From IMG/VR virus record IMGVR_UViG_3300041411_000080, positions 256,859 to 320,858 of that record: a stretch of DNA of 64,000 nucleotides; one strand, given 5' to 3'. The notes under the pieces are model-generated. The model made no database searches. It saw only the letters and a program-made list of their open reading frames with translations, and was not told the origin of the DNA. A program made the translations under genes and the position numbers. The stretch's first letter is position 1. Every line of letters starts with the position of its first letter. This document shows, piece by piece, positions 45,018 to 63,245 of this stretch.

Positions 45018-45040
45018 ATACTTTCTTGTAATAGTATGTA
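45018..45040 (+). promoter_or_regulatory. ATACT-N8-ATAGTATG promoter-like element
   Basis: Contains the phiKZ late-type TATG; shared with three other ncRNA units. Confidence 0.55.
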
Positions 45041-45150
45041 ACGGAAGCGATAACGTTACTCCATTAGCTCCCTTGTGGAATGCATGATGGTTCTCCTTTA
45101 GTGTTGGTTTGTGGGTTGGTAAAGTTCCTCCCTTCGGGGAGGACTTTATT
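45038..45150 (+). ncRNA. candidate small RNA with anti-SD/anti-start segment
   Basis: Promoter, about 110 nt with no + strand ORF, then a terminator; CATGATGGTTCTCCTTTAGTG segment. Confidence 0.45.
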
Positions 45151-45151
45151 T
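45121..45151 (+). terminator. terminator
   Basis: TCCTCCC-UUCG-GGGAGGA followed by CTTTATTT. Confidence 0.85.
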
Positions 45152-45176
45152 TGCCTCGAGCTTTAAGGATTCAAAA

Positions 45177-45401
45177 ATGATTGTTATTAGCGAAGACCGA
45201 TTAGCCCTACAGCAAGGAATCTATGACGATGTATTGTCAGATATCCTACCTGTGGTTAAGGCTAAGTGTAAAGGTGTTGCTCGGATCATAGTAGTCAAGC
45301 GAAAGCTTACTCCTACTGAAACTGAGTTCACTTGGATATTCAAAGGCACCAACAACGAAACCGAAGTTTACCATACATTCACAATTGAAGGAATGCAATA
45401 A
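45177..45401 (+). CDS. hypothetical protein
   Basis: 74 aa; AAGGA SD. Confidence 0.7.
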   Translation: MIVISEDRLALQQGIYDDVLSDILPVVKAKCKGVARIIVVKRKLTPTETEFTWIFKGTNNETEVYHTFTIEGMQ

Positions 45402-45652
45402 TGACCCGTAATGAACAACTGATTAATACCATCCGTGACCTGCTGGGTGATGCCGACATTACATGGCAGGAACTGTTGCAGAAGATCCACACCAGCCACA
45501 GTGATATCAAACATGTCTATGGTATCCGTGACCATCAGGCAGATATCTTGTCGTTGTCTATTAAGTGCAATGATCGTACCTTGATTACCTGTAACTTTGT
45601 ACGTGAACCAATCGAACCGCCTCAAAGCTGGACGCTACCAGTCGAGCTGTAA
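45401..45652 (+). CDS. hypothetical protein
   Basis: 83 aa; TAATG coupling. Confidence 0.7.
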   Translation: MTRNEQLINTIRDLLGDADITWQELLQKIHTSHSDIKHVYGIRDHQADILSLSIKCNDRTLITCNFVREPIEPPQSWTLPVEL

Positions 45653-45658
45653 GACGAA

Positions 45659-45692
45659 ATAAACCCCTCCCGTTAAGGAGGGGCTTTATGAC
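45659..45692. terminator. bidirectional terminator
   Basis: CCCCTCC-cgttaa-GGAGGGG; same stem-loop as at 60103. Confidence 0.85.
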
Positions 45693-45693
45693 G

Positions 45694-46929
45694 TTATGGA
45701 ACGAGTTCCAATACTGGACGCCAACCGTAACCGGAAGTCGGAGGAGTTGTATCACTAATAGCCCACGAAGTCTGGATACTAGTAAACCCTCGGGTCGTAC
45801 CACCGTAAACATGCGTGAGAACACCTGGTCGTACAGCACCATTTGCAACGCATAGGTCAGTGTTATTATAAGCTGCCCAGAAGTTGGTGTTAACAACAAC
45901 GGTAGAGTTATCGTAAACCGAGTACATGTAACGGTTCCACTCGGCATCCGTCATCAGACGGCACTTGTAGTTCTTACCTCCGATAGTAACCAACTTACCA
46001 TCCGCTGTGTTACTGATACCAGCAGCGTTAAGTACCGAGCGGTTAATACCATCGCGGAAACTCTTCTGCGCGATGTAGAGTTCTTTACCGTTCTCTACAA
46101 ACTTCATCCACGCGCCAGCGCCGGATACTACAGTACCGACAGTCACGCCAGCTAAGGTCGACAGATCAGCTACGTTGATCAGTTCCTCGGGTTGTACCAG
46201 TCCTTTATACGGGGTTACTGGAACTGGCGGCGTGGTACCTTTCTCAACCAACATCGGACGCCAACCGTAGTACATCTCGGTATTGTTGTCACTAGTGTAC
46301 CAAACACCCATGACGTTAGGAACGTTGTTAGTGATAGGGTAGCACAAACCACGAACAGCGTGTCCAGTATTGGTGACAATTTCCTTCATGTAGGACATGC
46401 CACCCGGTGGGAAAGTATTGATCGCCTGAGTTTCTGAGATAAGTGGGATACCCAACATCTTCTCAGTATAACTACCCCAGTTCTCACGAGTAGCTGGAAG
46501 TTGGTTAGCCCGTTCACCAGCATAAACGTTGTAGATGTAACGATCCCAAGCACCGCCACCGTTAGCATTGGATGCAGCTAGGTTATTAGCTTTCATACCA
46601 GTCATGAATTCAACGAGGAATGTCTTCCCACCGATAATGATTTCTTTACCAGTCTGAGCTGTGTTAATAGCTGGCCATGTTAATGCAGCGCGTAGCGGTT
46701 TCTTGGCGATGTAGATATTGTATCCGTTGTCTTCAACAAAGTGTAGCCACCCGGCATCACTGTTAATAGATACACCAGCGGTTAAACCTATTTGGCTTGC
46801 TAACTGCGAACCGGTAATGAAGTTCTTAGCGCTCACCACCCCTTTAAATGGCGTCCCAGCCGGAAAGGGTAAATTACTGTCATCCGAAGCGGGGGCCTGA
46901 TTTCCAGACACTAAGAGTTGTTCTAGCAT
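45694..46929 (-). CDS. putative virion protein with two GWRP(V/M)L-terminated domains
   Basis: Internal duplication (PFKGVV.../PYKGLV...; YGWRPMLVE / YGWRPVLELVP); paralogous to the 51665 and 52314 genes. Confidence 0.7.
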   Translation of the reverse strand: MLEQLLVSGNQAPASDDSNLPFPAGTPFKGVVSAKNFITGSQLASQIGLTAGVSINSDAGWLHFVEDNGYNIYIAKKPLRAALTWPAINTAQTGKEIIIGGKTFLVEFMTGMKANNLAASNANGGGAWDRYIYNVYAGERANQLPATRENWGSYTEKMLGIPLISETQAINTFPPGGMSYMKEIVTNTGHAVRGLCYPITNNVPNVMGVWYTSDNNTEMYYGWRPMLVEKGTTPPVPVTPYKGLVQPEELINVADLSTLAGVTVGTVVSGAGAWMKFVENGKELYIAQKSFRDGINRSVLNAAGISNTADGKLVTIGGKNYKCRLMTDAEWNRYMYSVYDNSTVVVNTNFWAAYNNTDLCVANGAVRPGVLTHVYGGTTRGFTSIQTSWAISDTTPPTSGYGWRPVLELVP

Positions 46930-47019
46930 GATAGGTTTCCTGAGGATATTTATATAAGCATAGGATTAAGCCAATACCTACCCGATTATGATATGTTTAA
47001 GATTATCTTTGGAGCGAGT

Positions 47020-49362
47020 ATGAATTCGCTAGACCTTTTGATCCGTCGAATTAAAGACCGGATAACCGTTTCTAATGAAGATGCGGTTGATATAGTAAAG
47101 CAGTACTGGGATGACGCCGTAGATACAGTTAAGGGTTACTGGCAGGACGTTGACGAGGCGATCGTAGAAGAAACGGGCATTCCCCGAGCTTCTCTATCAC
47201 AGCTCTTAGACGACAACCGGCAAGCTCATAGCTATGCTAACGTTGGCGGTAACTCAGGGGTAGCCAGTTACGATCTTGGAGATGATTGGTTTCTAGTGAA
47301 CTTCACAACTGGTTCTCGATACCTCTACACCACCAAGTCTGCTACACGCGAACAGATTGAAGAAATGAAACGGTATGCTAATGATGGTAAAGGTCTGAAC
47401 TCCTACATCATGCGTACTCTTAAAACCAATTATGCTGGACGAAACGTTAAAGGAGAGATCCTCATTAAACCGGGGATGGAACATTACTCTCGCCATGCAT
47501 TTAAACGAATCGAACTATTAGAGGCATACCGAAGTACCATGAACACACAAGTCGTAAGTACTGAAGGGTTGATTGCCGATATTAAGAAATTCTTCGGAGT
47601 ATCGAACAAATCCGCTAGAAAACTCTTTATTGACAACACTTTCGGCTGGAGTGTAATAGAACACATTGAGCGCGATATCCTGAGACCAGAATGGTTGAAA
47701 GACCAAACCTACAACAAAGGTGAGGTTAGTGGTAAGAGCGTTCTGAAGTATATAGGTAAAAACGGTAAGGTTGATATCACTGGTGCAAATAAACAATTGG
47801 ATGCTTTCCTTGCGGCGCGCATACGAGTTAAGAAAGCTACCGATGACTGGCGCCGTAAAACTAAGCCAGTTGCCGATATACTGATGCAAAACGCTAGAAA
47901 GCTAACGCCTGAAGTCTATGCCAGTGCCAAAGCAGCCATGGATAAAATCCCAGTCGAGAAATATGACGTGAACTATCCAACTACCCCAGTGGTGGGTAAT
48001 GGTAAACGTCATGAGAATCCTAAGCGGGTAGATTTTGTTTACACACCAGTTGACCAGCCGATACCGGCACTCGATGAGGGTGAGGCTCTTAAATTAGCTG
48101 CGGATATCCAACGGTCGATTGACGAGTTTAAGAAAAACATGACGGGTGCACCAGATGAATGGCCCGATATCATGCATGCCATGGTTTATACCATGCAACC
48201 CAAGAACTACGGTGGTGTTCCTTACGACGATTGGAATTCTCTTATTTGGGATATCCTTAGCCCAGACACTAACGAGACAACTCACTATAGCGGCATGATC
48301 GCAAACCGACTGTACTGGGATGCAATCGTGGGGTTAGTTCGATATCTTGATGTATCAATCAAAGGGGACACTATTATTTCTGGTGAAAATTACACACCTT
48401 CGAATGTTAAAGAGGCTAATATGCATCGCACGCTGCTAAGATATAAAGACCAAATTAGTAAGGCCGGCCAAGACGGTCTTGATCCGGTGGCCAGACAGTT
48501 TATGTCGGTAGGTCTTGAGTCATTGGGTGGTGAACCATTGTCAACCCATGGTACCAATGCTCCAACCAATAGCTCTGAAGCGTTTAATGACCCAATGGTC
48601 CCCTCTATGGAAGACCTGCTTGGATCAATTAAGAAGTTCTTCACTAAAGGTAAGGACACCGCTATCTACGATACCGTAGGTAAAGGCTTCCTTCAAGATC
48701 TCGTGCACGAAGTGAAGAAGTATACCGATCCTAACTGGGTTAAGACCCTAGGTGTAGTAGAACCTCAGAAAGTAAGCGTGGATGGTGCTAACCTTATTGC
48801 CGATTTTGACAAAGTCGTTCCAGAGTTTATTAAAGCCTGTCAAGCCAACCGCGTGGAACACCACAAAGTGACCGAGCAAGCATTCAGTAACATGGAAACC
48901 GTGATGGACATGGTCAAACGTAAACAGCTTGATAACTCAACTAACGTTGAGAAAGCCATTACGATCATGAAAGCTACTCGTCAACTGAAAGCTCCTAAGG
49001 TAGAAGTACCTAAGGTGACTATGCAGAAAGGTGAAGTCAAGACCTTGAACGCTGAACAGATTGTTGATCACGCTAAGAAGGTACATGCCTTGTTCGATGT
49101 TCTGGGTGCCGATCTGACATTCGTTAAAAGGTGGAATGATAACTTCATTAACACCCATGCTTGGATGGATTGGAAGTACGTAGGTAAGTCCAACTACAGC
49201 GAGCTGTATCAACAAGTAAAAGATCCTAAGTTTACTGAACTGTATCAGAAGGCAATGGAAAATGTTTACGACATGCATCGTGTAGGCGTGGAGTTCCATA
49301 AACTACAGCCTTACATCATGGCCGTATTCCAACTGATTGAGAAATCGGTTAAAGACAAGTGA
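47020..49362 (+). CDS. multi-module internal head protein with N-terminal KTSC-like domain
   Basis: Start refined to MNSL after GGAG; SGVASYD...VNFTTGSRYLY...GKGLNSYI is KTSC-like; repeated S-x-E-(G/D)..IKKFF motifs. Confidence 0.65.
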   Translation: MNSLDLLIRRIKDRITVSNEDAVDIVKQYWDDAVDTVKGYWQDVDEAIVEETGIPRASLSQLLDDNRQAHSYANVGGNSGVASYDLGDDWFLVNFTTGSRYLYTTKSATREQIEEMKRYANDGKGLNSYIMRTLKTNYAGRNVKGEILIKPGMEHYSRHAFKRIELLEAYRSTMNTQVVSTEGLIADIKKFFGVSNKSARKLFIDNTFGWSVIEHIERDILRPEWLKDQTYNKGEVSGKSVLKYIGKNGKVDITGANKQLDAFLAARIRVKKATDDWRRKTKPVADILMQNARKLTPEVYASAKAAMDKIPVEKYDVNYPTTPVVGNGKRHENPKRVDFVYTPVDQPIPALDEGEALKLAADIQRSIDEFKKNMTGAPDEWPDIMHAMVYTMQPKNYGGVPYDDWNSLIWDILSPDTNETTHYSGMIANRLYWDAIVGLVRYLDVSIKGDTIISGENYTPSNVKEANMHRTLLRYKDQISKAGQDGLDPVARQFMSVGLESLGGEPLSTHGTNAPTNSSEAFNDPMVPSMEDLLGSIKKFFTKGKDTAIYDTVGKGFLQDLVHEVKKYTDPNWVKTLGVVEPQKVSVDGANLIADFDKVVPEFIKACQANRVEHHKVTEQAFSNMETVMDMVKRKQLDNSTNVEKAITIMKATRQLKAPKVEVPKVTMQKGEVKTLNAEQIVDHAKKVHALFDVLGADLTFVKRWNDNFINTHAWMDWKYVGKSNYSELYQQVKDPKFTELYQKAMENVYDMHRVGVEFHKLQPYIMAVFQLIEKSVKDK

Positions 49363-49456
49363 GGTTAGCATGTCTATCACTACCCTAACGAAATACAAAG
49401 ACCAAATTAGTAAGGCTGGTCAAGATGGTCTTGATCCAGTGGCATGTCAGTTCATG
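48444..49456 (+). repeat. duplicated segment of about 60 bp encoding YKDQISKAGQDGLDPVA.QFM
   Basis: 48445-48503 versus 49397-49455; mostly synonymous differences. Confidence 0.85.
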
Positions 49457-50359: not shown

Positions 50360-50364
50360 CTTAA

Positions 50365-50392
50365 CGCCTCCCTTCGGGGAGGCTTTATGTCG
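50365..50392 (+). terminator. terminator
   Basis: GCCTCCC-UUCG-GGGAGGC then TTTATGTCG. Confidence 0.85.
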
Positions 50393-50479
50393 TCAAGGAT
50401 TACTGACCTGTGAAATCGTACGTAGCAATCCCGCTACATTAACTGATACCAAATCCCATTGGGGAACAGGATACAGAAA

Positions 50480-51334: not shown

Positions 51335-51336
51335 TC

Positions 51337-51597: not shown

Positions 51598-51599
51598 TA

Positions 51600-51632
51600 A
51601 TAGCCCCTACCTTCGGGTAGGGGCTTATGTCG
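51600..51632 (+). terminator. terminator
   Basis: AGCCCCTACC-UUCG-GGTAGGGGCT then TATGTCG. Confidence 0.85.
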
Positions 51633-51664
51633 CAATGTTATAGACTTTCAAACTGGTGAGTGTT

Positions 51665-52306: not shown

Positions 52307-52313
52307 GGTTACT

Positions 52314-53021
52314 ATGATTGAATTAATGTTAACGGTCCCTAAGCCAGTGGTCAACCCTTGGCCGGCAGGTATCCCTGGACCGCAGACCATAGCTACAGGT
52401 GATCAGAATATCGGTTTCTTTGGTGAAGTGTCGGGTACTGATTTTATTACTTACCCTGATCTACAAACCGCAGTTGGCTTTACAACTGGCAACGCGATGA
52501 ACCCGACTGGTGGATGGCTAAAACTAGCTTATAAAGGGAACGTCCAGTTCATCTCTAAACTTAGTGTTAGGAACAACGTTTCTTGGGCAGCTATGAATAC
52601 GCTGGGTATTGTATCAGCCGCTCAGAATAAATTGATTACTATTAAAGGTAAGGTTTACCGTCTACGCCTGATAAATGGTGTCAATGTCGACCCGTATCCA
52701 GTTAACGCCGATGATGCCACTGGTGGACCATACACAACTGGTACTGAATGGAACCATCTTATCTATGGATTGCTATCAACCGCAGTTGGTGCACAGAACC
52801 TAGAGGGTCCGGCGTTGGCCACCTACGGTACTACTGATTTGGGACTGTCTCCATTTGGCAACGGTACGAGTATCCTTGTTAAGGAACTGGGTCCGGGTCC
52901 AGTGTCTATGGTTCGTGGTAACGCTAGTGGTGCTGTGCGTGGACTTTATCGTTATGCAGCGCTAGCTAACGCGGATACGATCCGTGGATGGAAACCTGTG
53001 CTGGAATACGTCAGCGGTTAA
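52314..53021 (+). CDS. putative virion protein, GWRPVLE family
   Basis: MIELM start; GFFGEV..DFI; WLKL; EWN.L.Y; GWKPVLEYV. Confidence 0.7.
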   Translation: MIELMLTVPKPVVNPWPAGIPGPQTIATGDQNIGFFGEVSGTDFITYPDLQTAVGFTTGNAMNPTGGWLKLAYKGNVQFISKLSVRNNVSWAAMNTLGIVSAAQNKLITIKGKVYRLRLINGVNVDPYPVNADDATGGPYTTGTEWNHLIYGLLSTAVGAQNLEGPALATYGTTDLGLSPFGNGTSILVKELGPGPVSMVRGNASGAVRGLYRYAALANADTIRGWKPVLEYVSG

Positions 53022-53024
53022 ATA

Positions 53025-53047
53025 ATACTTTTGTTGCAATAGTATGT
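53025..53047 (+). promoter_or_regulatory. ATACT-N9-ATAGTATG promoter-like element of the tRNA cluster
   Basis: Same signature as 45018, 56179 and 63245. Confidence 0.6.
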
Positions 53048-53120
53048 AGGACTATGAATCCTCAACGATTTCAGGAAGTTAGTAGATTGCTTAAATGTGA
53101 TTAAAAGCTTCCGCTTATTT

Positions 53121-53207
53121 GGAGAGGTTCCCGAGCGGCTCAAAGGGACCAGACTGTAAATCTGGCGTCTATCGACTTCCAAGGTTCAAATCCTTGTCTC
53201 TCCACCA
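53121..53207 (+). tRNA. tRNA-Tyr (GTA)
   Basis: GGAGAGG/TCTCTCC acceptor, CCAGA-CT-GTA-AA-TCTGG, long variable arm, GTTCAAATC, encoded CCA. Confidence 0.96.
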
Positions 53208-53225
53208 AATACAGAGGTGTTTGAT

Positions 53226-53390
53226 ATGAAGGTTAAAATTAATCCCCGCCCATTAGTCAACCATGGTCCAGCTGATTGTCGCTGTTGCTCACGGTTGAAC
53301 TGGAAGGATCTTAAACTTGATAAGCAAATTCTCAAAGAAGCTGTAAACGATGCTGACTACGCCCTCAGCAAACGTGAACAGCGTGCATAG
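53226..53390 (+). CDS. 54 aa protein inside the tRNA cluster
   Basis: GAGGTG SD; MKVKINPRPLVNHGPADCRCCSRLNW...QRA. Confidence 0.6.
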   Translation: MKVKINPRPLVNHGPADCRCCSRLNWKDLKLDKQILKEAVNDADYALSKREQRA

Positions 53391-53474
53391 TTACATGATT
53401 CTTGCAGCGGCTGCGCCTGAGTAAATGCTGTCTTAACTTAACGTTACGGCGTTAGGAGAATCACCCAGTTACAT

Positions 53475-53550
53475 TCCATGATAGCTCAGTTGGTAGAGCC
53501 CACCGCTGTTAACGGTGTTGTCCCTGGTTCGAGTCCAGGTCATGGAGCCA
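53475..53550 (+). tRNA. tRNA-Asn (GTT)
   Basis: TCCATGA/TCATGGA acceptor, CACCG-CT-GTT-AA-CGGTG, GTTCGAGTC, CCA. Confidence 0.96.
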
Positions 53551-53554
53551 ATTT

Positions 53555-53580
53555 AAAAGAGAACTTCGGTTCTCTTTTAT
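53555..53580 (+). terminator. UUCG hairpin between tRNAs (terminator or processing signal)
   Basis: AAAAGAGAAC-TTCG-GTTCTCTTTT. Confidence 0.65.
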
Positions 53581-53590
53581 TCAGTGTTAC

Positions 53591-53666
53591 ACATGCCTAG
53601 CTCAATTGGCAGAGCAGCTGCCTCCAAAGCAGTTGGTTCCAAGTTCGATTCTTGGGGTGTGTGCCA
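53591..53666 (+). tRNA. tRNA-Trp (CCA)
   Basis: ACATGCC/GGTGTGT acceptor with two G.U pairs, GCTGC-CT-CCA-AA-GCAGT, GTTCGATTC, CCA. Confidence 0.92.
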
Positions 53667-53668
53667 AA

Positions 53669-53766
53669 TTGAATGTAATGTAGAACTCGGGTTCAACTCC
53701 TGAGATTTGGACGGCCCGCCTAACAGGGCTATTAGCTTAAGCTGGTTAAAGCGGCATTACATTCGA
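53669..53766 (+). ncRNA. circularly permuted tRNA mimic (YrlA/Y-RNA-like topology)
   Basis: 13-bp terminal stem, T-arm, closed acceptor-like hairpin and D-arm, in that order; no anticodon loop. Confidence 0.75.
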
Positions 53767-53787
53767 CTTAATCCCTGTGCACGGGGA

Positions 53788-53895
53788 TACAATGTTCATG
53801 TGGATTACGATAGTGTGAGCGCCTCGTAAGCGTGAGAAGACCCTAGGCCTCAGGACAGAGGGAAAAGACCCGTAGCCACCGGAGAGAACATTGTA
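53788..53895 (+). ncRNA. unknown structured RNA
   Basis: Perfect 10-bp TACAATGTTC/GAACATTGTA closing stem continued by GTGG/CCAC and TACG/CGTA. Confidence 0.5.
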
Positions 53896-53958
53896 GTGCG
53901 TATACTTGGACGTCCCTCCATCGAACTGAAGCGTAGTTGGGAAACCAGTGTGATATTT

Positions 53959-53986
53959 GAGAGTCCTTCGGGACTCTCTTATGTCG
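53959..53986 (+). terminator. terminator of the tRNA/ncRNA cluster
   Basis: GAGAGTCC-UUCG-GGACTCTC then TTATGTCG. Confidence 0.85.
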
Positions 53987-54038
53987 TCTCAAGGATTACC
54001 AGACGGTATAGATGTATAGTTAACTAATCGAGGTGAGT

Positions 54039-54209
54039 ATGATTACAGATAACCTGTTCGATAAAATCCTAGCTCAGATCGCCCCAACTCGGGAAGAACG
54101 CCTAGCTCAGGCAGCTGACCGTAGTCGAGTAATCAACGAGCGTCTAGCTAAACAACACGAAGCACAGCGAGTAACTCCCGAGCTATTAGCCAAGCGGTGT
54201 ACGCTATGA
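54039..54209 (+). CDS. 56 aa hypothetical protein
   Basis: Manual translation MITDNLFDK...KRCTL; GAGGTG SD; ATGA overlap with the next gene. Confidence 0.65.
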   Translation: MITDNLFDKILAQIAPTREERLAQAADRSRVINERLAKQHEAQRVTPELLAKRCTL

Positions 54210-55479: not shown

Positions 55480-55558
55480 CCCTGTGATAAAATACCCAGT
55501 CACATCATCTAATGAAGTCGGGTGAGACACACTACGACACTTCTAAAGAGAAATCAAA

Positions 55559-56176
55559 ATGCACGTAAATGAAGGCGATATCGCCAAGTACATACAAGAA
55601 CACGATGACCTGTACACCTGCACCATCGACGGTAAGAAACAAGTACTGGTTGCTAAAGACAGTCACACGCTGGTCGTGAAAGACATTGAAGGCTACTTCA
55701 TGTCGTTCGATTCGAATAAGGCACTGTTTGTTACAACTATGACTGGGGGAACGGTTCAAGTTGAAGTAGATGCAGTTTTCCCGTCTGAGTTGATAAAGGC
55801 TATTAAAGACGAAGCACTAGATAAAGCTATCCGTCATAGCCTCGAACGACTGCTCCCAGCTGCGGAAGAGATGATCAAGCATTACACTGCATTCGATAAG
55901 GCTCTACCCATAGCTCGCATGAAGACATATCTCCGTGTGTATGTCCTTAAAGATGCCGACTTCAGTCAAGCAGGTAAAGGTTCTGTGGTGATCTGTCCCA
56001 CTGACAATGATCCGACAGGTCAGGATCGTGACATCATTAAAGGGTACGTTTACTGTAGCGAACATGACAGCATCAAGTTCGAGACCGTTCAAGCTTGGCG
56101 CTATCGTCGGGTAAGCGCAAGTAGTATCTTCACTTGTAAGTACGATACGAGCTGGATCTCATTGATGTCAGCGTAA
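55559..56176 (+). CDS. hypothetical protein
   Basis: 205 aa. Confidence 0.75.
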   Translation: MHVNEGDIAKYIQEHDDLYTCTIDGKKQVLVAKDSHTLVVKDIEGYFMSFDSNKALFVTTMTGGTVQVEVDAVFPSELIKAIKDEALDKAIRHSLERLLPAAEEMIKHYTAFDKALPIARMKTYLRVYVLKDADFSQAGKGSVVICPTDNDPTGQDRDIIKGYVYCSEHDSIKFETVQAWRYRRVSASSIFTCKYDTSWISLMSA

Positions 56177-56178
56177 TA

Positions 56179-56201
56179 ATACTCGTTGGTAGATAGTATG
56201 T
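56179..56201 (+). promoter_or_regulatory. ATACT-N9-ATAGTATG promoter-like element
   Basis: Same signature as the tRNA-cluster promoter. Confidence 0.6.
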
Positions 56202-56460
56202 AAGACTAACAGTCTCACTCGTCCAACTACCTGCCCCTAATCCCCTCAGACTAGGGCCACAGACTGTAGGTAGTTGTGATTAAAAGTATCCCGTGACGCT
56301 CTCTGACAAGTCGGAATAAGAGAGTATCAGGAAAGTCGAAGGCCCGCACCCCTAATAGGCTGAACATCTGACGACTCAGGTACTAGGTCCGTCCGCTCAA
56401 CGTGCAGAGCACCCTTCCCCAAGGTATCATGGGCTGAAGCGAAACAGTAAACTCGTCCTT
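56200..56460 (+). ncRNA. unknown structured ncRNA of about 260 nt
   Basis: No + strand ORF of 60 aa or more; multiple stems; bounded by a promoter signature and a UUCG terminator. Confidence 0.6.
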
Positions 56461-56490
56461 TAGACCCTACCTTCGGGTAGGGTTCTATTC
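56461..56490 (+). terminator. terminator
   Basis: ACCCTACC-UUCG-GGTAGGGT. Confidence 0.8.
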
Positions 56491-56513
56491 CGCAAAATGA
56501 GAAGATTACAAAT

Positions 56514-57168: not shown

Positions 57169-57187
57169 AAAAAAAATAAGGCATATA

Positions 57188-57217
57188 CCAGCTCCCGAAG
57201 GAGCTGGCTTTATGTCG
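57188..57217. terminator. bidirectional terminator
   Basis: CCAGCTCC-cgaa-GGAGCTGG then CTTTATGTCG. Confidence 0.85.
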
Positions 57218-57742: not shown

Positions 57743-57774
57743 GAAATTCCTTTTTGAGGTTAATATTCACATGT

Positions 57775-57801
57775 GTAATATAGGGCTCAAAAGGCTTACA
57801 A
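57775..57801 (-). promoter_or_regulatory. phiKZ-type early promoter
   Basis: TTGTAAGCCTTTTGAGCCC-TATATTAC. Confidence 0.72.
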
Positions 57802-57850
57802 TAAATACTAGCGAGGTAGATAGTGTAGACAACAACTACACGAGGTTCTT

Positions 57851-58504
57851 ATGCACTGTCCAGACTTCATCACCCATATGCATGTCAAAAGTCGCTTTAA
57901 TGACCAAGTCGATGATTGGGTTAAAACTATATCCGATGCTATTTCATTAGTGGTTAAACGTAACCTGTCGGCTACCCGTAATCAACTCATTAACATCGTC
58001 AAAGCTGATTTGAATTACCAGTTCGAATCGCAGACTATCCCACCGTCTATCTGGGTGAGTGACAAAGGTGAGCGGCATATCAATATCATCGTTACGCTGT
58101 TTGATATCGGTAAGATGAAGTTTAAGGTAATCGTACCTTCACTGCGTACACCTGAAGAGATTCAAAAGAAAGCACGCTATGACCTAGGTTGCCTGATTGG
58201 TGATCTATCGCAAGACGTTTACGAGTGCAGCTATAATGACTTCGACGTATACGTTGGATGGAAAAGCAAGACACTCAATTCCTATTGGTCAGGGATGTCT
58301 GAATCCTTTAAGGACAATCTTCGTACACCGCACAACCGTCAGCTGTTCATCGAGTATTGCAATAAACCCGGCTGGGACTGGGAAGCACTGCTTGATGGAC
58401 TTTACGAGAAAGCTCAAGGCTGGCCTACTGATTGGCTAGACTCCTACAAAACACCGGATGAACTTTCAACCTTACCCTATTACCAGTATACAGAGGCAGC
58501 ATAA
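57851..58504 (+). CDS. hypothetical protein
   Basis: 217 aa; GAGG SD; coupled to the radical SAM gene. Confidence 0.75.
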   Translation: MHCPDFITHMHVKSRFNDQVDDWVKTISDAISLVVKRNLSATRNQLINIVKADLNYQFESQTIPPSIWVSDKGERHINIIVTLFDIGKMKFKVIVPSLRTPEEIQKKARYDLGCLIGDLSQDVYECSYNDFDVYVGWKSKTLNSYWSGMSESFKDNLRTPHNRQLFIEYCNKPGWDWEALLDGLYEKAQGWPTDWLDSYKTPDELSTLPYYQYTEAA

Positions 58505-59409: not shown

Positions 59410-59416
59410 GTGTAAC

Positions 59417-59791
59417 ATGAAACTCCCGCAATTCAAAATAGAGAAACTCGTAAACAAACCCGGTAATGAAATGTGGCGCATCGGTGGAGGCTTCCATGCT
59501 TACCGTGGCTACTTCCGTATCGACATAGGTACTGTGGGTTATCGCATTACTCGTGACTTCGATTACACTGCTGATTTTAATCGTCTGTATAACCAGCTTA
59601 CTGATGAGAACCAGAACACCGTGATGCGCCATATGGATACCCTGATGGCAGAAGCCCGTGAGAACCCAAGTATCGAAACCATAGATATTTGCCGTGGCGG
59701 TAACTGCATCGTTCGTGAACGTGTTGACTTGTGGCAGAAGATGTGGGCACGCACTCGTGAACTGCTCCGCGCCCAGAGGACTATGAAATGA
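59417..59791 (+). CDS. hypothetical protein
   Basis: Start refined to MKLPQF after AGGTG. Confidence 0.7.
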   Translation: MKLPQFKIEKLVNKPGNEMWRIGGGFHAYRGYFRIDIGTVGYRITRDFDYTADFNRLYNQLTDENQNTVMRHMDTLMAEARENPSIETIDICRGGNCIVRERVDLWQKMWARTRELLRAQRTMK

Positions 59792-60093
59792 GTGTACCTT
59801 TCGATGAGATCAAAAACGCTGTAGGGTCAGATCCTAGCTATGCATGGAGTTGGCACTGTAACTTGGCAATGTCGGCTTTAGATGCATCTAAGGGGACGAT
59901 TGACCATACCACAGCTAACGTTATCGCTGCTGGTCAAATGCGACATCTGTTCCAGTACGATATCACCGTACTGCAAGAGTATAAAGATGTAGTTGCGTCA
60001 GGTGATGCTATGGCTTTGGATGATGACGATCCAGATCAAGAGTCTACGTTGCAACTGATCCTCAATCTCTTGCGTAAGATCGCAAAAAAATAA
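59788..60093 (+). CDS. hypothetical protein
   Basis: 101 aa; YAWSWHCNLAM motif; ATGA coupling. Confidence 0.7.
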   Translation: MSVPFDEIKNAVGSDPSYAWSWHCNLAMSALDASKGTIDHTTANVIAAGQMRHLFQYDITVLQEYKDVVASGDAMALDDDDPDQESTLQLILNLLRKIAKK

Positions 60094-60094
60094 A

Positions 60095-60132
60095 GCATAA
60101 GACCCCTCCCGTTAAGGAGGGGCTTTATGCCG
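60095..60132. terminator. bidirectional terminator
   Basis: CCCCTCC-cgttaa-GGAGGGG then CTTTATGCCG. Confidence 0.85.
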
Positions 60133-60134
60133 TC

Positions 60135-60476
60135 TTATCGTGAACGCAGCTTCTTTAGATCGTACGCTGTTATCTCAACAGCCTCGATAGTCTTTCGACC
60201 TTCTTTCAAAGCCTTGTATGCACGATGAAACCCATCAAGTGTTTTGAGCGTACCATCTGCATCTCGAGTCACAATGATAGGGAAACCATCGATGACTATA
60301 TTAGCTAATCGTTTCTTACTAATACGGTCATGTGGATACTGCCAACGGAGTTCTTCTAGATCAACCGTTATTACAGGTTTATCCTTGGCATACTCTATTA
60401 GTTCATCCACAGTATAGCTCCCATGAGCCTCCTGAGCGATCGATTTGCAGAACTGCATGAGGTTTACTCGTGCCAT
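60135..60476 (-). CDS. stand-alone ParB/Srx N-terminal-like domain protein
   Basis: PIIV......LDGFHRAYKA. Confidence 0.7.
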   Translation of the reverse strand: MARVNLMQFCKSIAQEAHGSYTVDELIEYAKDKPVITVDLEELRWQYPHDRISKKRLANIVIDGFPIIVTRDADGTLKTLDGFHRAYKALKEGRKTIEAVEITAYDLKKLRSR

Positions 60477-60478
60477 TG

Positions 60479-60898
60479 TTATCGCACTCCTGGGCGACGC
60501 TTAGAACTCTGACGAGACTCTACGGTAACCACCGGGGTAGTCGCCTGTTTGAGGAACTCGACCTTTTCCTGCAAAGCCAATTTCTGGTCAGCAGACAAGA
60601 TCAAATGCTCGTCAGGTGGAATGCCCTTTTGACCGTTACATTGCCAGTCGTAATCTCTCGGATGACATACGCCATCAGGATGTCCTAAGCGAACTACTGG
60701 CTTGATACCAGTGTCGCCTAGACGCGGTACAGCCTTCCCGTGAGCAATGATGATATCTGCTTCATCAATGGCTTCTGGATCGTCTGTAACGCTCACACCC
60801 AGATCTTCTACGAACTGGGTGATATCGTTGTAGTACTCTAAGGCTAAGTCAGTCTTGACGAACCTTGGACCACCTTTAAGCAACACGGCTCTCAACAT
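60479..60898 (-). CDS. hypothetical protein (small alpha/beta fold)
   Basis: 139 aa; AGGAG SD; ADIIIAHG. Confidence 0.7.
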   Translation of the reverse strand: MLRAVLLKGGPRFVKTDLALEYYNDITQFVEDLGVSVTDDPEAIDEADIIIAHGKAVPRLGDTGIKPVVRLGHPDGVCHPRDYDWQCNGQKGIPPDEHLILSADQKLALQEKVEFLKQATTPVVTVESRQSSKRRPGVR

Positions 60899-61385
60899 GA
60901 CCGTCTCCTATATTAGTTTCATAGGATTGGGTCACTTTGGCCGCGAGCGCTTTCCACCAGACACTGGCTTCAGCACGATTGCGGAACCGTGGGGAACGGA
61001 ACATCACCGTGATATGAGAGATCTTACCAGAAATCTCGATCTCACGTGGTAAGGACTTCGAACGGATTTCAATGGTTGGTTGGGAAGCCCGAGAAGTAAT
61101 GTCACGTACAGTCGACAACTCCGAGAGCAGATCGTTCATCATAAACGGATTGTCGCAGATGAACTGAATGAAGCCATTAGATACGTCTTCACCGATACCA
61201 CTGTGAGACATAGCTACAACCGAACCCAGATTGCGGTTCCAGATATAGTTAACGAAGGTCAACATATCGGTGTTGTACTTGTCCCAACGCCCACCATCTT
61301 GCTTAGTGGCGAAGTGATCGTACAAAGCTTCATGTGACAGGTTCTTGCAGTTTACAGCTACGGAGGGAAGTGTTGGCAGACCCAT
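60876..61385 (-). CDS. hypothetical protein, paralog of 61387..61872
   Basis: Shares G[FY]I.[FW]I and R...F.N......WWK.L. Confidence 0.7.
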   Translation of the reverse strand: MGLPTLPSVAVNCKNLSHEALYDHFATKQDGGRWDKYNTDMLTFVNYIWNRNLGSVVAMSHSGIGEDVSNGFIQFICDNPFMMNDLLSELSTVRDITSRASQPTIEIRSKSLPREIEISGKISHITVMFRSPRFRNRAEASVWWKALAAKVTQSYETNIGDGHVESRVA

Positions 61386-61386
61386 A

Positions 61387-61872
61387 TCAAAATCCTTTTG
61401 TGTGATTAGTAACAGTGGTGATAGCGTCCAGTAGATCTTTCCACCAGCGAGCTTTAATGCGTTCGTTATGGAATGCCATCGTCCGAAGAGTCAGAGAGTG
61501 CATACCCATGGTGTCGTAAGTGTTGGTATCGTGATACAGTGGGTTAGCATCCACATCAAACATCAGATGGGCCTTCTCGTTGTGCAGTCGCATCCAAGTC
61601 TGTGCTTGGTTCAGGATCGCTAAGAAAGCAATGTGGGTAGCAGCATCCTTAAAGATCCAGGTGATGTAACCCTTGTTAAGATTGCGGTCAGGATGACCTT
61701 CACAACTGAATACACTCACAGCACCGTGATTCACCATCGCGTACTTGATGACCGGCATGATCAGTGGATCGACGTCCTCGCCTTGCCCATGGACCGTATC
61801 GATCAGTTCATTGTACTTACGCTCAAAGAAAGCAGCGTGACCGTCACTACCATATCCCCAGAAACCACTCAT
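61387..61872 (-). CDS. hypothetical protein with SCEGH motif
   Basis: VDPLIMPV...SVFSCEGH, weakly reminiscent of TYW3-like folds. Confidence 0.7.
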   Translation of the reverse strand: MSGFWGYGSDGHAAFFERKYNELIDTVHGQGEDVDPLIMPVIKYAMVNHGAVSVFSCEGHPDRNLNKGYITWIFKDAATHIAFLAILNQAQTWMRLHNEKAHLMFDVDANPLYHDTNTYDTMGMHSLTLRTMAFHNERIKARWWKDLLDAITTVTNHTKGF

Positions 61873-62018
61873 ACCGAAACTCCTTTGACCAATTCCATTA
61901 ATAGAAACGACATAGAACCACCGAGCACCAACCCGATGGTAAGATTGAATACTGCTTGCTTCTGACGCTTTGTACGAGCCCGTTTAGCACGGGTTAATGG
62001 ATCATCAAACCCCAACAT
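61869..62018 (-). CDS. 49 aa basic single-TM protein
   Basis: Manual translation MLGFDDPLTRAKRAR...; AAGGAG SD; ATGA overlap. Confidence 0.6.
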   Translation of the reverse strand: MLGFDDPLTRAKRARTKRQKQAVFNLTIGLVLGGSMSFLLMELVKGVSV

Positions 62019-62039
62019 CGTTTTACTCCTTATTATTGC

Positions 62040-62537
62040 TTAGAACCAACCAGAGACCTTCCACGAACGTGGATACTTCTCCCAGTTGACTTTAAAACCT
62101 TTTATACTCAACCAGTCTGCCTGAGCGTTATTAAGGCAGTATTGATTATCTGGATTTGGTTCGTCATCTAGATCTCGGAATTCAACTTCGGATTCCTTTG
62201 CAGCGATGGCTTCATTAATACGTGCCAACTGTCCCTTCATCGTCCCGTCATTGATCAGCATATCGCGGATCTCTTGACAGTGATTCAGGTCGTCAAAGAA
62301 ATCGGCGAATGTAGCAAACGCGAGTGAGACAAAGCGGTACTCTTTATCGGGGTAGATACACACGACGTAAGGGTACGTACTAGGTTCATCATTAACGCCG
62401 CGAACGCTGGCCTTGGAACCGAGTTCTTCTTTTTCGATGACCAGATCAATAACCGACTGTAGCTCACCTTCGCTTTCAATCCGAAAGCGATACATGTCTG
62501 ATGAGCCGATAGCTTCATTACGTACTAACTCTTTCAT
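62040..62537 (-). CDS. hypothetical protein
   Basis: 165 aa; AAGGA SD. Confidence 0.75.
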   Translation of the reverse strand: MKELVRNEAIGSSDMYRFRIESEGELQSVIDLVIEKEELGSKASVRGVNDEPSTYPYVVCIYPDKEYRFVSLAFATFADFFDDLNHCQEIRDMLINDGTMKGQLARINEAIAAKESEVEFRDLDDEPNPDNQYCLNNAQADWLSIKGFKVNWEKYPRSWKVSGWF

Positions 62538-62546
62538 AGCAAGTCC

Positions 62547-62741
62547 TTAGTCGATATAGTAACGGTAAGCCAGTCGGTCCACAGTGGTGATAAACCCAAT
62601 ACCGGGTTGACCTTCAGTTTGAGACATGTTGAATCTGGCGATGCCTACCAGACGTAACTGTACTGGATGACGCCGGTAATTTTGGAAGAGCGGGTTCCTT
62701 ACCGTACGGTAAAGCTTTTCGAGTTCATCTTGCAATGTCAT
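62547..62741 (-). CDS. hypothetical protein
   Basis: 64 aa; AAGGAG SD. Confidence 0.7.
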   Translation of the reverse strand: MTLQDELEKLYRTVRNPLFQNYRRHPVQLRLVGIARFNMSQTEGQPGIGFITTVDRLAYRYYID

Positions 62742-62756
62742 ACTTGCTCCTTAAGA

Positions 62757-62790
62757 CGAAATAAAGCCCCCGCCAGATGGCAGGGGGCTT
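62757..62790 (-). terminator. terminator of the large ncRNA
   Basis: AAGCCCCC.GCCA/TGGCGGGGGCTT followed by TATTTCG on the minus strand. Confidence 0.8.
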
Positions 62791-63224
62791 GGGCTATAAT
62801 CTAACTACTACGTGCTGGCCAGCGCAACCCCCAGCGTATGCAGAGGTATCGCAGTTGTCAGTCGCTACTACTTACCACCCACAAACGCGTATGGTTTCGT
62901 AACTTCGCTATCCACAGTGAGTACCAATCAAAGGGATAACGCTTCGGTTCGACCATTGGTGATGGTCACTATGTTCTTCACAAGACAATATCCGAATATG
63001 GGTATTGCTTCACGTATACCGAAAGTTCAGTTATGCTAGGCGGAGTTCGATCAAGGCACCCAAGTTGTTGCTTATGGTGACGGGGACCCTACTTGGGGAG
63101 ATGACCCTTGAGAACTCCTTTACTGTTAGGATCACTGCCAAAGCAATGTTCCGAAAGTTGGAGCCCGCGATCTGGGGTGTTGCCAATGGAAGGCATGATG
63201 ATCACGGGAGGAGCATTCACTCCT
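62791..63224 (-). ncRNA. unknown structured ncRNA of about 440 nt
   Basis: Long gap with no minus-strand ORF; nested stems with G.U pairs that work only on the minus strand; bounded by promoter and terminator. Confidence 0.65.
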
Positions 63225-63245
63225 ATACTATTACACTGAGAGTAT
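63224..63245 (-). promoter_or_regulatory. ATACT-N9-ATAGTATA promoter-like element
   Basis: Same signature as the tRNA-cluster promoter. Confidence 0.55.

What the first reader, a model, noticed from the sequence alone, without database searches (positions are those of the whole stretch)
45018..63245. One promoter signature heads all four non-coding units: a possible phage ncRNA regulon
Seen: ATACT-ttcttgta-ATAGTATG (45018), ATACT-tttgttgca-ATAGTATG (53025), ATACT-cgttggtag-ATAGTATG (56179) and ATACT-ctcagtgta-ATAGTATA (63245, minus strand). Each begins a few nt after a stop codon, includes an ATACT/AGTAT inverted repeat with a 10-11 nt spacer, and is followed by non-coding sequence and a terminator. 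One of them precedes bona fide tRNAs. Established: phiKZ non-virion RNAP late promoters carry TATG at the start site. Looser (A/T)TAC...TATG/TGTG versions precede some coding genes here (about 18170, 43798, 57803), so this may be the strong form of a general middle/late promoter. Inference: the tRNAs, tRNA mimic, sRNA and two large RNAs form a co-expressed stable-RNA system, and the motif could predict further ncRNAs genome-wide.
Basis: partly seen in the sequence, partly recalled or inferred. Interest (0 to 1): 0.78.

Follow-up and report, generated by a model that had tools for sequence, protein, structure and literature searches.

The report
Consensus middle-class promoter heading phage stable RNAs
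A giant Pseudomonas phage puts the best-matching copies of its phiKZ-type "middle" promoter in front of its tRNAs and several conserved structured RNAs of unknown function, so the motif works as a finder for non-coding RNA genes in this phage group.

Summary
ATACT-N8,9-ATAGTAT occurs four times in the window and nowhere else in the 320,858-bp genome (0.05 expected). Each copy starts 1-3 nt after a stop codon. Three head ORF-free, terminator-ended stretches. The fourth heads a tRNA operon that also holds a conserved 54-aa ORF.

It is not a new kind of signal. It matches the published phiKZ-type middle promoter (A-rich run plus TACT near -20) with the TATG start motif and an extra TGTAAT-like block at -12 to -7. 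The ATACT/AGTAT inverted repeat is incidental, because orthologues lose it.

A weight matrix built from the sites finds six outliers in the genome, and all six head RNA units. Two are new ncRNA genes outside the window. Weaker matches sit 24-58 nt before ordinary genes.

The signature also heads orthologous units in 201phi2-1, Viktualia and other relatives. In phiKZ it precedes four tRNA transcription units and ncRNAs whose published ends fit the predicted start.

The RNAs are conserved, show compensatory base-pair changes, lack conserved ORFs and match no Rfam family. Co-expression, the polymerase or factor involved, and the RNA functions remain untested.

Verdict: a real promoter class and a useful ncRNA predictor; a new variant of a known kind.

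The parts
45011..45038 (+). Promoter P1: ...AACATACT (45018-45022 = ATACT), TGTAAT block 45026-45031, ATAGTATG 45031-45038. Predicted +1 is G45038.
   Evidence: 28.4 bits; reversed-genome control maximum 18.1.
45038..45152 (+). U1: ~113-nt RNA ending at an intrinsic terminator (stem 45126-45143). A co-directional 74-aa ORF starts at 45177.
   Evidence: Orthologues in G002, 201phi2-1 and Viktualia. Longest sense ORF in own copy is 8 aa. Fold z = -2.5. No Rfam family.
53017..53046 (+). Promoter P2: AAATAATACT-N5-TGCAAT-AGTATG. Predicted +1 is G53046. This is the best-scoring site in the genome.
   Evidence: 31.4 bits.
53046..53990 (+). Unit 2, a mixed operon: 75-nt leader, tRNA-Tyr 53121-53207, conserved 54-aa ORF 53226-53390, tRNA-Asn 53475-53550, tRNA-Trp 53591-53666, then the U2c RNA 53667-53990 with terminator stem 53960-53979.
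53770..53887 (+). U2c core: ~118-nt RNA domain, nearly invariant in nine phage genomes or contigs. In most it lies directly 3' of a tRNA (Trp, Ser or Cys); in this phage, 201phi2-1 and L152 a spacer or tRNA-like stretch intervenes.
   Evidence: The first hairpin covaries (CCCTGTGCACGGG versus TCTGCTGCAGCAGA). No Rfam family.
56171..56200 (+). Promoter P3: TAATAATACT-N5-GTAGAT-AGTATG. Predicted +1 is G56200.
   Evidence: 25.2 bits. The orthologous Viktualia promoter reads AATACC...ATAGTATG.
56200..56492 (+). U3: ~290-nt structured RNA ending at terminator stem 56463-56482. It is homologous to the long leader that precedes tRNA-Leu in Viktualia. This phage has lost the tRNA-Leu but kept the leader and terminator.
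   Evidence: 12 compensatory pairs, 0 of 300 shuffles reached that number. Longest sense ORF 11 aa. z = -3.3.
63224..63253 (-). Promoter P4 (minus strand): AATAAATACT-N5-TGTAAT-AGTATA. Predicted +1 is A63224.
   Evidence: 27.8 bits. Orthologous promoters in 201phi2-1, Viktualia, G002, L073 and L050.
62757..63224 (-). U4: ~465-nt structured RNA with a 5'-terminal hairpin starting at +1, an invariant unpaired GGGTCCCCGTCACCA segment, and terminator stem 62786-62767.
   Evidence: 110 predicted pairs, 31-32 of them with compensatory changes in 6 sequences. Slid controls gave 1-8, and 0 of 300 shuffles reached the observed number. Indels are not multiples of 3 and no ORF is conserved. No Rfam family.
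57804..57828 (+). Weaker member of the same class (AATAAATACT-N..-GATAGTGTAG), 24 nt before the CDS at 57851. This is an mRNA promoter candidate.
   Evidence: 19.0 bits.
43764..43791 (-). Copy of a different promoter-like motif (ATTAGAA-N4-TTTAA-N3-CTATATTAC, probable early class).
   Evidence: Five copies in the window (0 expected); 15 consensus copies in the genome, all on the minus strand.

Best explanation
The four sites are real transcription start signals for the phage's own multisubunit RNA polymerase, and they belong to the phiKZ-type 'middle' promoter class in its most consensus-like form. The signal has three blocks. An A-rich run ending in (A)ATACT lies at about -27 to -17. A TGTAAT-like block lies at -12 to -7, where the phiKZ non-virion polymerase starts to deform and open DNA. 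TAT(G/A) lies at -3 to +1, with the last base as the start. In phiKZ the beta-like subunit GP123 binds TATG on the opened non-template strand, and the sigma-like GP68 contacts the duplex around -18/-19 and -22/-23. By inference the same polymerase starts here, probably helped by the still unidentified middle-class factor. Transcription runs through a stable-RNA unit (tRNAs and/or a structured ncRNA) and mostly stops at a phiKZ-type intrinsic terminator. Any read-through would feed the small genes behind the terminator. The phage places its six best copies of the signal in front of stable-RNA genes, where output depends on transcription alone, and uses weaker copies for mRNAs. Shown here: the motif statistics, its exclusivity to RNA units, its conservation in relatives, the RNA structure signals, and agreement with published phiKZ transcript ends. 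Inferred: which polymerase or factor acts, the timing, promoter strength and RNA functions.
For: (1) The strict motif occurs 4 times in the window and 4 times in the genome, against 0.05 expected.

(2) A two-block weight matrix gives six sites at 25-31 bits, while the reversed-genome control peaks at 18. All six are followed by a tRNA or by at least 139 nt without a CDS, five of them terminator-ended RNAs. Intergenic sites at 17-19 bits sit 24-58 nt before CDSs at five of six sites. Six of 6 against at most 1 of 6 gives a hand-calculated Fisher one-sided p of about 0.008.

(3) Two of the six (genome 63628- and 170697+) were new predictions. Both are terminator-ended RNAs of roughly 170-190 nt, conserved in three relatives.

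(4) All orthologous units in 201phi2-1, Viktualia and G002 keep the signature at the same place, although spacers and the palindrome vary. More distant phages (G003, G004, L152, L153) have it before tRNA-Tyr, tRNA-Cys plus U2c, and a long CDS-free stretch.

(5) In phiKZ, the matrix built from this phage ranks tRNA-Asn, a site 158 nt upstream of a CDS that I take to be the published 5'UTR_gp40 ncRNA, and tRNA-Asp as its top three. It also hits the sites before tRNA-Thr and tRNA-Leu. The northern-validated ncRNA 270595-270485(-) starts within 1 nt of the G of TATACT-N9-ATATTATG. The 141-nt ncRNA upstream of PHIKZ302 fits a start at the G of ATATTATG and an end at the terminator (PMC10914365).

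(6) Literature: the phiKZ middle motif is TACT centred about 22 nt upstream of the start, preceded by an A-rich repeat (PMC8244752). It is also given as AAanTTACc at about -24, with some middle promoters also carrying TATG (PMC4666361). The 201phi2-1 tRNA-Leu is transcribed from a middle promoter and an sRNA lies just upstream of it (PMC11512511); the matrix finds that site at 300440(-), 91 nt before the tRNA. Polymerase-DNA contacts are described in PMC12809450.

(7) The genome encodes split beta and beta' RNAP fragments.

(8) There is no sigma-70-like match on the motif strand.

(9) U6 is oriented opposite to all its neighbouring genes. Its 5' end is therefore hard to explain as processing of an upstream co-directional transcript.
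Against: There are no transcript data for this phage. The only runs found hold low-depth metagenome contigs of relatives and give no 5' ends. The weight matrix was trained on the RNA-unit sites themselves, and the orthologous sites in close relatives are not independent events. In the more distant G003, two sites of 22-24 bits sit 45-54 nt before CDSs, and Viktualia has one such site at 21.8 bits, so the link between a strong site and an RNA unit is a tendency and not a rule. Purified phiKZ nvRNAP did not use the middle promoters P62M and P78M in vitro although they carry TATG (PMC4666361), so the enzyme or factor assignment is open. The supplementary TSS tables of the 201phi2-1 and phiKZ studies were not available. 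Gene calls came from a home-made ORF scorer.
Confidence: 0.78

Rival explanations
1. The units are mainly cis-acting 5' leaders. A strong promoter plus a conditional terminator (attenuator or antitermination switch) would meter expression of the small genes just downstream (45177, 56514, 62741-), and the short RNAs would be by-products.
For: U1, U3 and U4 are each followed within about 25-35 nt of the terminator by co-directional ORFs with no promoter of their own. In phiKZ, many 5'UTR terminators show two modes, a short abundant RNA and a long read-through transcript (PMC10914365). Eight of the 11 sRNAs in 201phi2-1 come from premature termination in 5'UTRs (PMC11512511).
Against: U6 has no co-directional gene behind it. 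U3's orthologue in Viktualia leads into a tRNA, not a protein gene. U2c follows tRNAs. U4 is ~465 nt with about 110 conserved pairs and an invariant unpaired segment, far more than an attenuator needs. This reading is compatible with the promoter explanation and may hold for U1.
Confidence: 0.3
2. The motif marks RNA processing sites, not promoters. The 'middle' 5' ends would arise when a nuclease cuts longer early transcripts at or near UAUG.
For: PMC10612078 raises this as an open alternative for phiKZ middle transcripts. Every motif sits directly after a stop codon with no terminator in between, so upstream transcription could run into it.
Against: The conserved blocks lie upstream of the mature 5' end, at -27 to -7, which is typical of DNA signals. 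In phiKZ such ends were recovered by methods that enrich primary 5'-triphosphate ends (dRNA-seq, ONT-cappable-seq). U6 is antisense to its neighbours, so no co-directional precursor is expected.
Confidence: 0.07
3. The ATACT/AGTAT inverted repeat is an operator for a dimeric DNA-binding regulator, or an RNA hairpin, and that is why it is shared.
For: All four copies in this phage carry a perfect 5-bp inverted repeat with a 10-11 nt gap.
Against: Orthologous sites break the symmetry while keeping the two blocks: ATACG or ATACC with ATAGTAT in Viktualia, ATACT with ATATTAT in 201phi2-1, and ATACT with ATAATAT in phiKZ. Most of the repeat lies upstream of the predicted start, so it would not be in the RNA.
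Confidence: 0.04
4. The sites are host sigma-70 promoters, or copies of the phage's early (virion RNAP) promoter.
For: TAGTAT resembles a -10 hexamer in 4 of 6 positions, and the early-type motif of this phage also contains ATTAC.
Against: The sigma-70 scan finds nothing on the motif strand at any of the four sites. phiKZ-like phages do not depend on host RNAP (PMC4666361, PMC10612078). The probable early motif, ATTAGAA-N4-TTTAA-N3-CTATATTAC, is a distinct and much longer signal whose 15 consensus copies all lie on the minus strand.
Confidence: 0.04

Closest known systems
phiKZ middle promoters (Ceyssens 2014 class; described in PMC4666361 and PMC8244752), including P62M and P78M, which also carry TATG
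   Same: An A-rich run plus TAC(T/C) about 20-24 nt upstream of the start. TATG lies 13-14 nt after the TAC block: the AAAATTACC-N14-TATG site found in phiKZ (presumed P78M) against AATACT-N13-TATG here. Both occur in phages with two split multisubunit RNAPs.
   Different: The copies here are much closer to a consensus. They add a TGTAAT-like block at -12 to -7 and are used for stable-RNA units. Published logos describe the class as weakly conserved and mostly upstream of protein genes.
phiKZ tRNA and ncRNA transcription units (the ncRNA at 270595-270485(-), the 141-nt RNA upstream of PHIKZ302, 5'UTR_gp40; PMC10914365, PMC8545117)
   Same: Same signature, same start at the G of ATATTATG, same terminator type, and the same genome neighbourhood mixing tRNAs and ncRNAs.
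   Different: The RNA bodies show no detectable sequence homology with U1-U6. The papers available here do not state that these units share a distinctive promoter form.
201phi2-1 middle promoter of tRNA-Leu and the sRNA just upstream of that tRNA (PMC11512511)
   Same: Orthologous to unit U3 here. The matrix finds AAAAGAATACC-N5-TGTAAT-ACTATA 91 nt before tRNA-Leu.
   Different: In this phage the tRNA-Leu is gone and the leader is about 290 nt long. The ~465-nt U4 RNA would have been missed by that study's <250-bp sRNA filter.
Phage T4 tRNA cluster with its two co-transcribed small stable RNAs of unknown function (recalled from my own knowledge, not checked here)
   Same: Stable RNAs of unknown function lie next to tRNAs in one transcript and are presumably released by tRNA-processing enzymes, like U2c behind tRNA-Trp, tRNA-Ser or tRNA-Cys.
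   Different: T4 uses the host RNAP, and no sequence relationship is known.
Bacterial rRNA/tRNA promoters as the strongest promoters of a genome (general knowledge)
   Same: The closest-to-consensus promoters are reserved for stable-RNA genes.
   Different: A different polymerase and different promoter architecture. Strength was not measured here.

Membership tests
phiKZ-type middle promoter | TACT (TTAC/ATAC) motif centred about 20-24 nt upstream of the start and preceded by an A-rich run | tested here: met
   ATACT lies at -21 to -17 (-20 to -16 at 45018) relative to the G/A after TAT. It is preceded by AAATA, TAATA, AATAA or TTAAC. The definition comes from PMC8244752 and PMC4666361.
phiKZ-type middle promoter | A mapped primary 5' end at the fixed distance downstream | not testable with these tools
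   No RNA data exist for this phage. Indirect support: two phiKZ ncRNAs with the same signature start at the predicted G.
phiKZ-type middle promoter | Middle temporal class (onset after early genes, before or with late genes) | not testable with these tools
   No time-course data are available.
phiKZ-type middle promoter | The host genome is a phage with phiKZ-like split multisubunit RNAPs | tested here: met
   Two Rpb2_6-like fragments and one Rpb1_2-like fragment in the genome. The nearest relatives are 201phi2-1 and Viktualia.
phiKZ late promoter (nvRNAP, TATG) | 5'-TATG-3' with G as +1 | tested here: met
   Three of the four sites have TATG and the fourth has TATA. The new sites have TATG (170697) and TATA (63628).
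phiKZ late promoter (nvRNAP, TATG) | No conserved element upstream of -4 (the late class is marked by TATG alone) | tested here: not met
   Conserved AATACT and TGTAAT blocks lie upstream. The sites are therefore not filed as plain late promoters.
phiKZ late promoter (nvRNAP, TATG) | Transcribed by purified five-subunit nvRNAP in vitro | not testable with these tools
   This is a wet-lab assay. phiKZ middle promoters with TATG were poor templates (PMC4666361).
Host sigma-70 promoter | -35 and -10 hexamers with a 16-18 nt spacer | tested here: not met
   No hit on the motif strand at any of the four sites. The region has fewer hits than shuffles (17 against 31).
Early (virion RNAP) promoter of phiKZ-like phages | Long AT-rich consensus conserved near -10, -20 and -30 | tested here: not met
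   The genome has a separate motif, ATTAGAA-N4-TTTAA-N3-CTATATTAC (15 consensus copies). None of the four sites matches it. Calling that motif 'early' is an inference.
Palindromic operator | Both half-sites conserved as an inverted repeat in orthologues | tested here: not met
Any Rfam 15 RNA family (for the RNA bodies U1-U6 and U2c) | Covariance-model score at or above the gathering threshold | tested here: not met
   Only the three tRNAs pass. The best other hits have E >= 0.06 and score far below threshold.

The most novel reading that the evidence does not exclude
The three-block signature (A-rich/AATACT, TGTAAT, TATG/A) may be a dedicated stable-RNA promoter subclass of nucleus-forming jumbo phages, read by the non-virion polymerase together with the still unknown middle-class specificity factor. 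On this reading it co-ordinates a conserved set of phage RNAs that are needed for infection. These would include a ~465-nt structured RNA (U4) and a ~118-nt domain that is nearly invariant and usually fused to the 3' end of a tRNA (U2c). Possible roles include RNA handling at the phage nucleus, tRNA-directed counter-defence, or control of host translation.
Probability: 0.22. Interest if true: 0.82.

Novelty: new variant of a known kind. Interest (0 to 1): 0.58.

Why it matters
Which enzyme or factor reads phiKZ-type middle promoters is still an open question (PMC10612078). The class has been described as weakly conserved, which makes it hard to study. This work yields a set of near-consensus three-block copies, conserved from Serwervirus-like phages to phiKZ. 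Such copies are good templates for pull-downs, in vitro transcription and structural work. The same signature is a cheap sequence-only predictor of ncRNA genes in jumbo phages: it found two unannotated ones in this genome and flags units that relatives annotate as 'hypothetical proteins'. It also draws attention to conserved structured RNAs with no Rfam family (U4, U3, U5, U6 and the tRNA-linked U2c core). These are candidates for antisense knock-down in nucleus-forming phages.

Tried and rejected
- **Rfam:** gathering and E-value modes on all units found only tRNAs.
- **Public RNA runs:** only two wastewater libraries, probably DNA, with low-depth contigs of relatives, and one genome run of a relative. 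None gave 5' ends. One contig inside U3 had about 3-5 times the depth of its neighbours, which is too weak to use.
- **Supplementary TSS tables:** those of the 201phi2-1 and phiKZ ONT-cappable-seq papers are not held.
- **Simple mismatch search:** AATAC-N9-11-ATAGTATR with up to 2 mismatches gave as many hits as the reversed control (37 against 38). Only a weighted matrix combined with genomic context separates signal from noise.
- **Sigma-70 reading:** rejected.
- **Palindrome or operator reading:** rejected by the orthologues.
- **Hidden protein genes:** rejected. No ORF is conserved, and 0-4% of indels are multiples of 3 in U3-U6. The Viktualia 'hypothetical protein' calls over U3 and U4 are likely mis-annotations.
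- **Intron origin for U2c:** the only intron reported in 201phi2-1 lies elsewhere.
- **PHROGs search of the 54-aa ORF:** no family.
- **Metagenome scans for the U2c core:** the first pattern found nothing. A shorter one found 4 loci, of which 2 are true homologues.
- **Literature searches for described large ncRNAs of Chimalliviridae:** nothing specific.

Full report
**1. What the window is.** The 64-kb window is the right end of a complete 320,858-bp phage genome with direct terminal repeats. Its nearest named relatives are the Pseudomonas jumbo phages 201phi2-1 and Viktualia, with Phabio further away. The genome encodes split beta- and beta'-like RNA polymerase fragments, as phiKZ-like phages do.

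**2. Check of the observation.**
- ATACT-N8,9-ATAGTAT matches exactly at 45018(+), 53025(+), 56179(+) and 63245(-). Chance expectation is 0.05 per window.
- These are the only four copies in the whole genome.
- Each begins 1-3 nt after the stop codon of the preceding gene.
- Three run into stretches with no conserved ORF that end at phiKZ-type terminators, a GC hairpin followed by CTTTAT.
- The copy at 53025 heads tRNA-Tyr, tRNA-Asn and tRNA-Trp and a further ~320-nt RNA with its own terminator.
- That unit also holds a 54-aa ORF (53226-53390), which is conserved full-length as a protein in two relatives at 80% and 74% identity. It is therefore not purely non-coding.

**3. What kind of signal it is.**
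- If the base after TAT is taken as +1, ATACT lies at -21 to -17 and is preceded by an A-rich run.
- This is how the phiKZ middle promoter is described: a TACT motif centred 22 nt upstream of the start and preceded by an A-rich repeat (PMC8244752), or AAanTTACc near -24 (PMC4666361).
- TATG with G as +1 is the nvRNAP start motif. Two phiKZ middle promoters (P62M, P78M) carry both elements.
- In phiKZ, an AAAATTACC-N14-TATG site (presumably P78M) has almost the same spacing as AATACT-N13-TATG here.
- The cryo-EM work on phiKZ nvRNAP places GP123 on TATG. It places GP68 contacts at -18/-19 and -22/-23, with DNA deformation from -11 to -8 (PMC12809450). These positions coincide with the three conserved blocks seen here: AATACT, TGTAAT at -12 to -7, and TATG. 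That coincidence is an inference, not a test.
- The sites are not sigma-70-like.
- They differ from a second, much longer motif, ATTAGAA-N4-TTTAA-N3-CTATATTAC. That motif has 15 consensus copies, all on the minus strand, and is probably the early class.
It is incidental.

**4. Whether the motif is specific to RNA units.**
- A plain mismatch search is no better than a reversed-sequence control, 37 hits against 38.
- A two-block weight matrix separates six sites at 25-31 bits from everything else. The control maximum is 18.
- The six are the four reported sites plus genome 63628(-) and 170697(+).
- Both new sites head terminator-ended RNAs of roughly 170-190 nt (U5 and U6). U6 is oriented against all its neighbours.
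- All six are followed by a tRNA or by at least 139 nt without a CDS.
- Five of the six intergenic sites at 17-19 bits sit 24-58 nt before CDSs, for example window 57828 and 50422, and genome 24932, 295482 and 82260.
- A looser pattern, AATAC[TC]-N13-15-TGTA[GA], gives 12 hits against 1 in the control and includes mRNA promoters such as window 18194 and 57828.
Within this genome the top is used only for stable-RNA units.
The 'AATAC' near 43798, and part of the site near 57803, are the reverse complement of the upstream part of a CTATATTAC-type motif on the other strand.

**5. Conservation.**
- Every unit has orthologues in 201phi2-1, Viktualia and the close IMG/VR relative G002. The signature is present at the same place in each.
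- In 201phi2-1 the matrix finds AAAAGAATACC...TGTAAT-ACTATA 91 nt before tRNA-Leu. The ONT-cappable-seq paper states that this tRNA is transcribed from a middle promoter and that an sRNA lies directly upstream of it.
- In Viktualia the top sites precede tRNA-Tyr/Asn, U4, tRNA-Ser plus U2c, and an RNA antisense to a small ORF. One site precedes a CDS.
- More distant genomes (G003, G004) and metagenome contigs (L152, L153) again show the signature before tRNA-Tyr, tRNA-Cys plus U2c and a long CDS-free stretch. G003 also has strong sites before CDSs.
- phiKZ gives the most independent test, because its RNA bodies are unrelated. The matrix trained on this phage ranks tRNA-Asn, a site I take to be the Grad-seq ncRNA 5'UTR_gp40, and tRNA-Asp as the top three. 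It also hits the sites before tRNA-Thr and tRNA-Leu and two northern-validated ncRNAs.
- The published 5' end of the phiKZ ncRNA 270595-270485(-) is within 1 nt of the G of ATATTATG.
- The published 141-nt length of the ncRNA upstream of PHIKZ302 fits a start at the G of ATATTATG and an end in the terminator U-tract.

**6. The RNAs.**
- None matches an Rfam family.
- U4 (63224 to ~62757, minus strand) aligns across six phages. It has 110 predicted pairs, 31-32 of them with compensatory changes. Slid-partner controls give 1-8, and 0 of 300 shuffles reach the observed number. It has a hairpin starting exactly at +1 and an invariant unpaired GGGTCCCCGTCACCA.
- U3 and U5 each have 12 compensatory pairs (0 of 300 shuffles). 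U6 has 10 and U1 has 3. Caveat: there are few sequences, and each structure was derived from the same alignment used to test it.
- No ORF is conserved. Indels are almost never multiples of three in U3-U6.
- Fold z-scores are -1.4 to -5.0, against -0.6 to -0.9 for coding controls.
- U3 is the homologue of the long leader that precedes tRNA-Leu in Viktualia. This phage has lost the tRNA but kept promoter, leader and terminator. This argues weakly that the leader has a function of its own.
- The U2c core (53770-53887) is nearly invariant in nine genomes or contigs whose GC content ranges from 43% to 55%. In most it lies directly 3' of a tRNA (Trp, Ser or Cys); in this phage, 201phi2-1 and L152 a spacer or tRNA-like stretch intervenes. 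Its first hairpin covaries. It is probably released by tRNA 3' processing; that is an inference.

**7. Most likely mechanism, with rivals.** The phage polymerase, most likely nvRNAP with the unidentified middle-class factor, initiates at the G or A of TAT(G/A). It transcribes a stable-RNA unit and mostly terminates at the intrinsic terminator. Read-through may feed the small genes behind U1, U3 and U4. That makes the 'leader/attenuator' reading a partial rival, which I rate at 0.3 and which is compatible with the promoter claim. 'Processing site' is disfavoured by the upstream position of the conserved blocks, by the primary-end enrichment methods used in phiKZ, and by the antisense orientation of U6. 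'Operator' and 'host or early promoter' are rejected by direct tests.

**8. Novelty.** The promoter class is known, and the link between tRNA-Leu and a middle promoter is published. What I did not find stated in the accessible literature:
- Near-consensus, three-block copies are concentrated at tRNA and ncRNA units in eight complete phiKZ-like genomes plus several partial contigs.
- The signature predicts unannotated ncRNA genes.
- Several of these RNAs (U4, U3, U5, U6 and the U2c core) are conserved structured RNAs without a family.

I file it as a new variant of a known kind. Co-expression, strength, enzyme, timing and RNA functions remain untested.

Noticed in passing
window 16853-16880(-), 33567-33594(-), 41511-41538(-), 43764-43791(-), 57775-57802(-); 15 consensus copies genome-wide: A second, much longer promoter-like motif, ATTAGAA-N4-TTTAA-N3-CTATATTAC-N3-GTG. 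All consensus copies lie on the minus strand and 0 are expected by chance. It is probably the early (virion RNAP) promoter class of this phage. Several copies sit back to back with middle-like sites on the plus strand.
   Followed up: partly
genome G000:C1 63628 to ~63455 (-) (locus L148) and 170697 to ~170880 (+) (locus L149), outside the window: Two further ncRNA genes (U5 and U6, roughly 170-190 nt each) with the same promoter signature and intrinsic terminators. Both are conserved in G002, 201phi2-1 and Viktualia. U6 is antisense in orientation to all neighbouring genes.
   Followed up: yes
window 53770-53887: A ~118-nt RNA domain (U2c core) that is almost invariant across nine jumbo-phage genomes or contigs of 43-55% GC. 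In most it lies immediately 3' of a tRNA (Trp, Ser or Cys); elsewhere a spacer or tRNA-like stretch intervenes. It has no Rfam family.
   Followed up: partly
window 53226-53390 (+): A 54-aa ORF (MKVKINPRPL...CRCCS...) embedded between tRNA-Tyr and tRNA-Asn. It is conserved as a full-length protein in G002 (80%) and G003 (74%) and has DNA matches in Psa21 and RVTF4. It has no PHROG family.
   Followed up: partly
window 56200-56492 compared with Viktualia (L004:1506-1876) and 201phi2-1 300440-300263(-): This phage has lost the tRNA-Leu that follows the U3 leader in its relatives, but it keeps the promoter, the ~290-nt leader RNA and the terminator.
   Followed up: yes
window 53667-53769, including hairpin 53686-53704: The stretch between tRNA-Trp and the U2c core has a T-arm-like hairpin (loop UUCAACU) and aligns weakly with a Viktualia tRNA-Ser. 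It is probably a decayed tRNA. It is not called by ARAGORN or by the Rfam tRNA model.
   Followed up: partly
Viktualia 85717(-) and 201phi2-1 310902(-) (loci L035 and L030): A strong copy of the signature heads a ~300-nt transcript that is antisense to a small ORF and ends at a bidirectional terminator. This unit is absent from the window's genome.
   Followed up: partly
window 10315 (-), around 10290-10340: A weaker signature (AATTACT-N9-ATAGTATA) is followed almost at once by a GC hairpin (GGGGGCCGTAGGGGCCC), 90 nt before a CDS. It is conserved in G002. It could be a very short RNA or an attenuator.
   Followed up: no
Viktualia record PV037725.1: CDS0139, CDS0140 (L001) and CDS0154 (L004): 'Hypothetical protein' genes are annotated on top of the U4 and U3 RNA homologues. 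The ORFs are not conserved in other phages, so these calls are likely mis-annotations.
   Followed up: partly
window 56212-56401 (run X2): In one wastewater 'RNA-Seq' library a contig lying wholly inside U3 has word depth 15.5, against about 3-6 for neighbouring contigs of the same relative. This hints at high RNA abundance but is far too weak to count as evidence.
   Followed up: no
window 54000-54019 (+): A general-class promoter-like site (GGATTACC-N..-GATGTATAG) sits right after the U2c terminator and 20 nt before the CDS at 54039.
   Followed up: no
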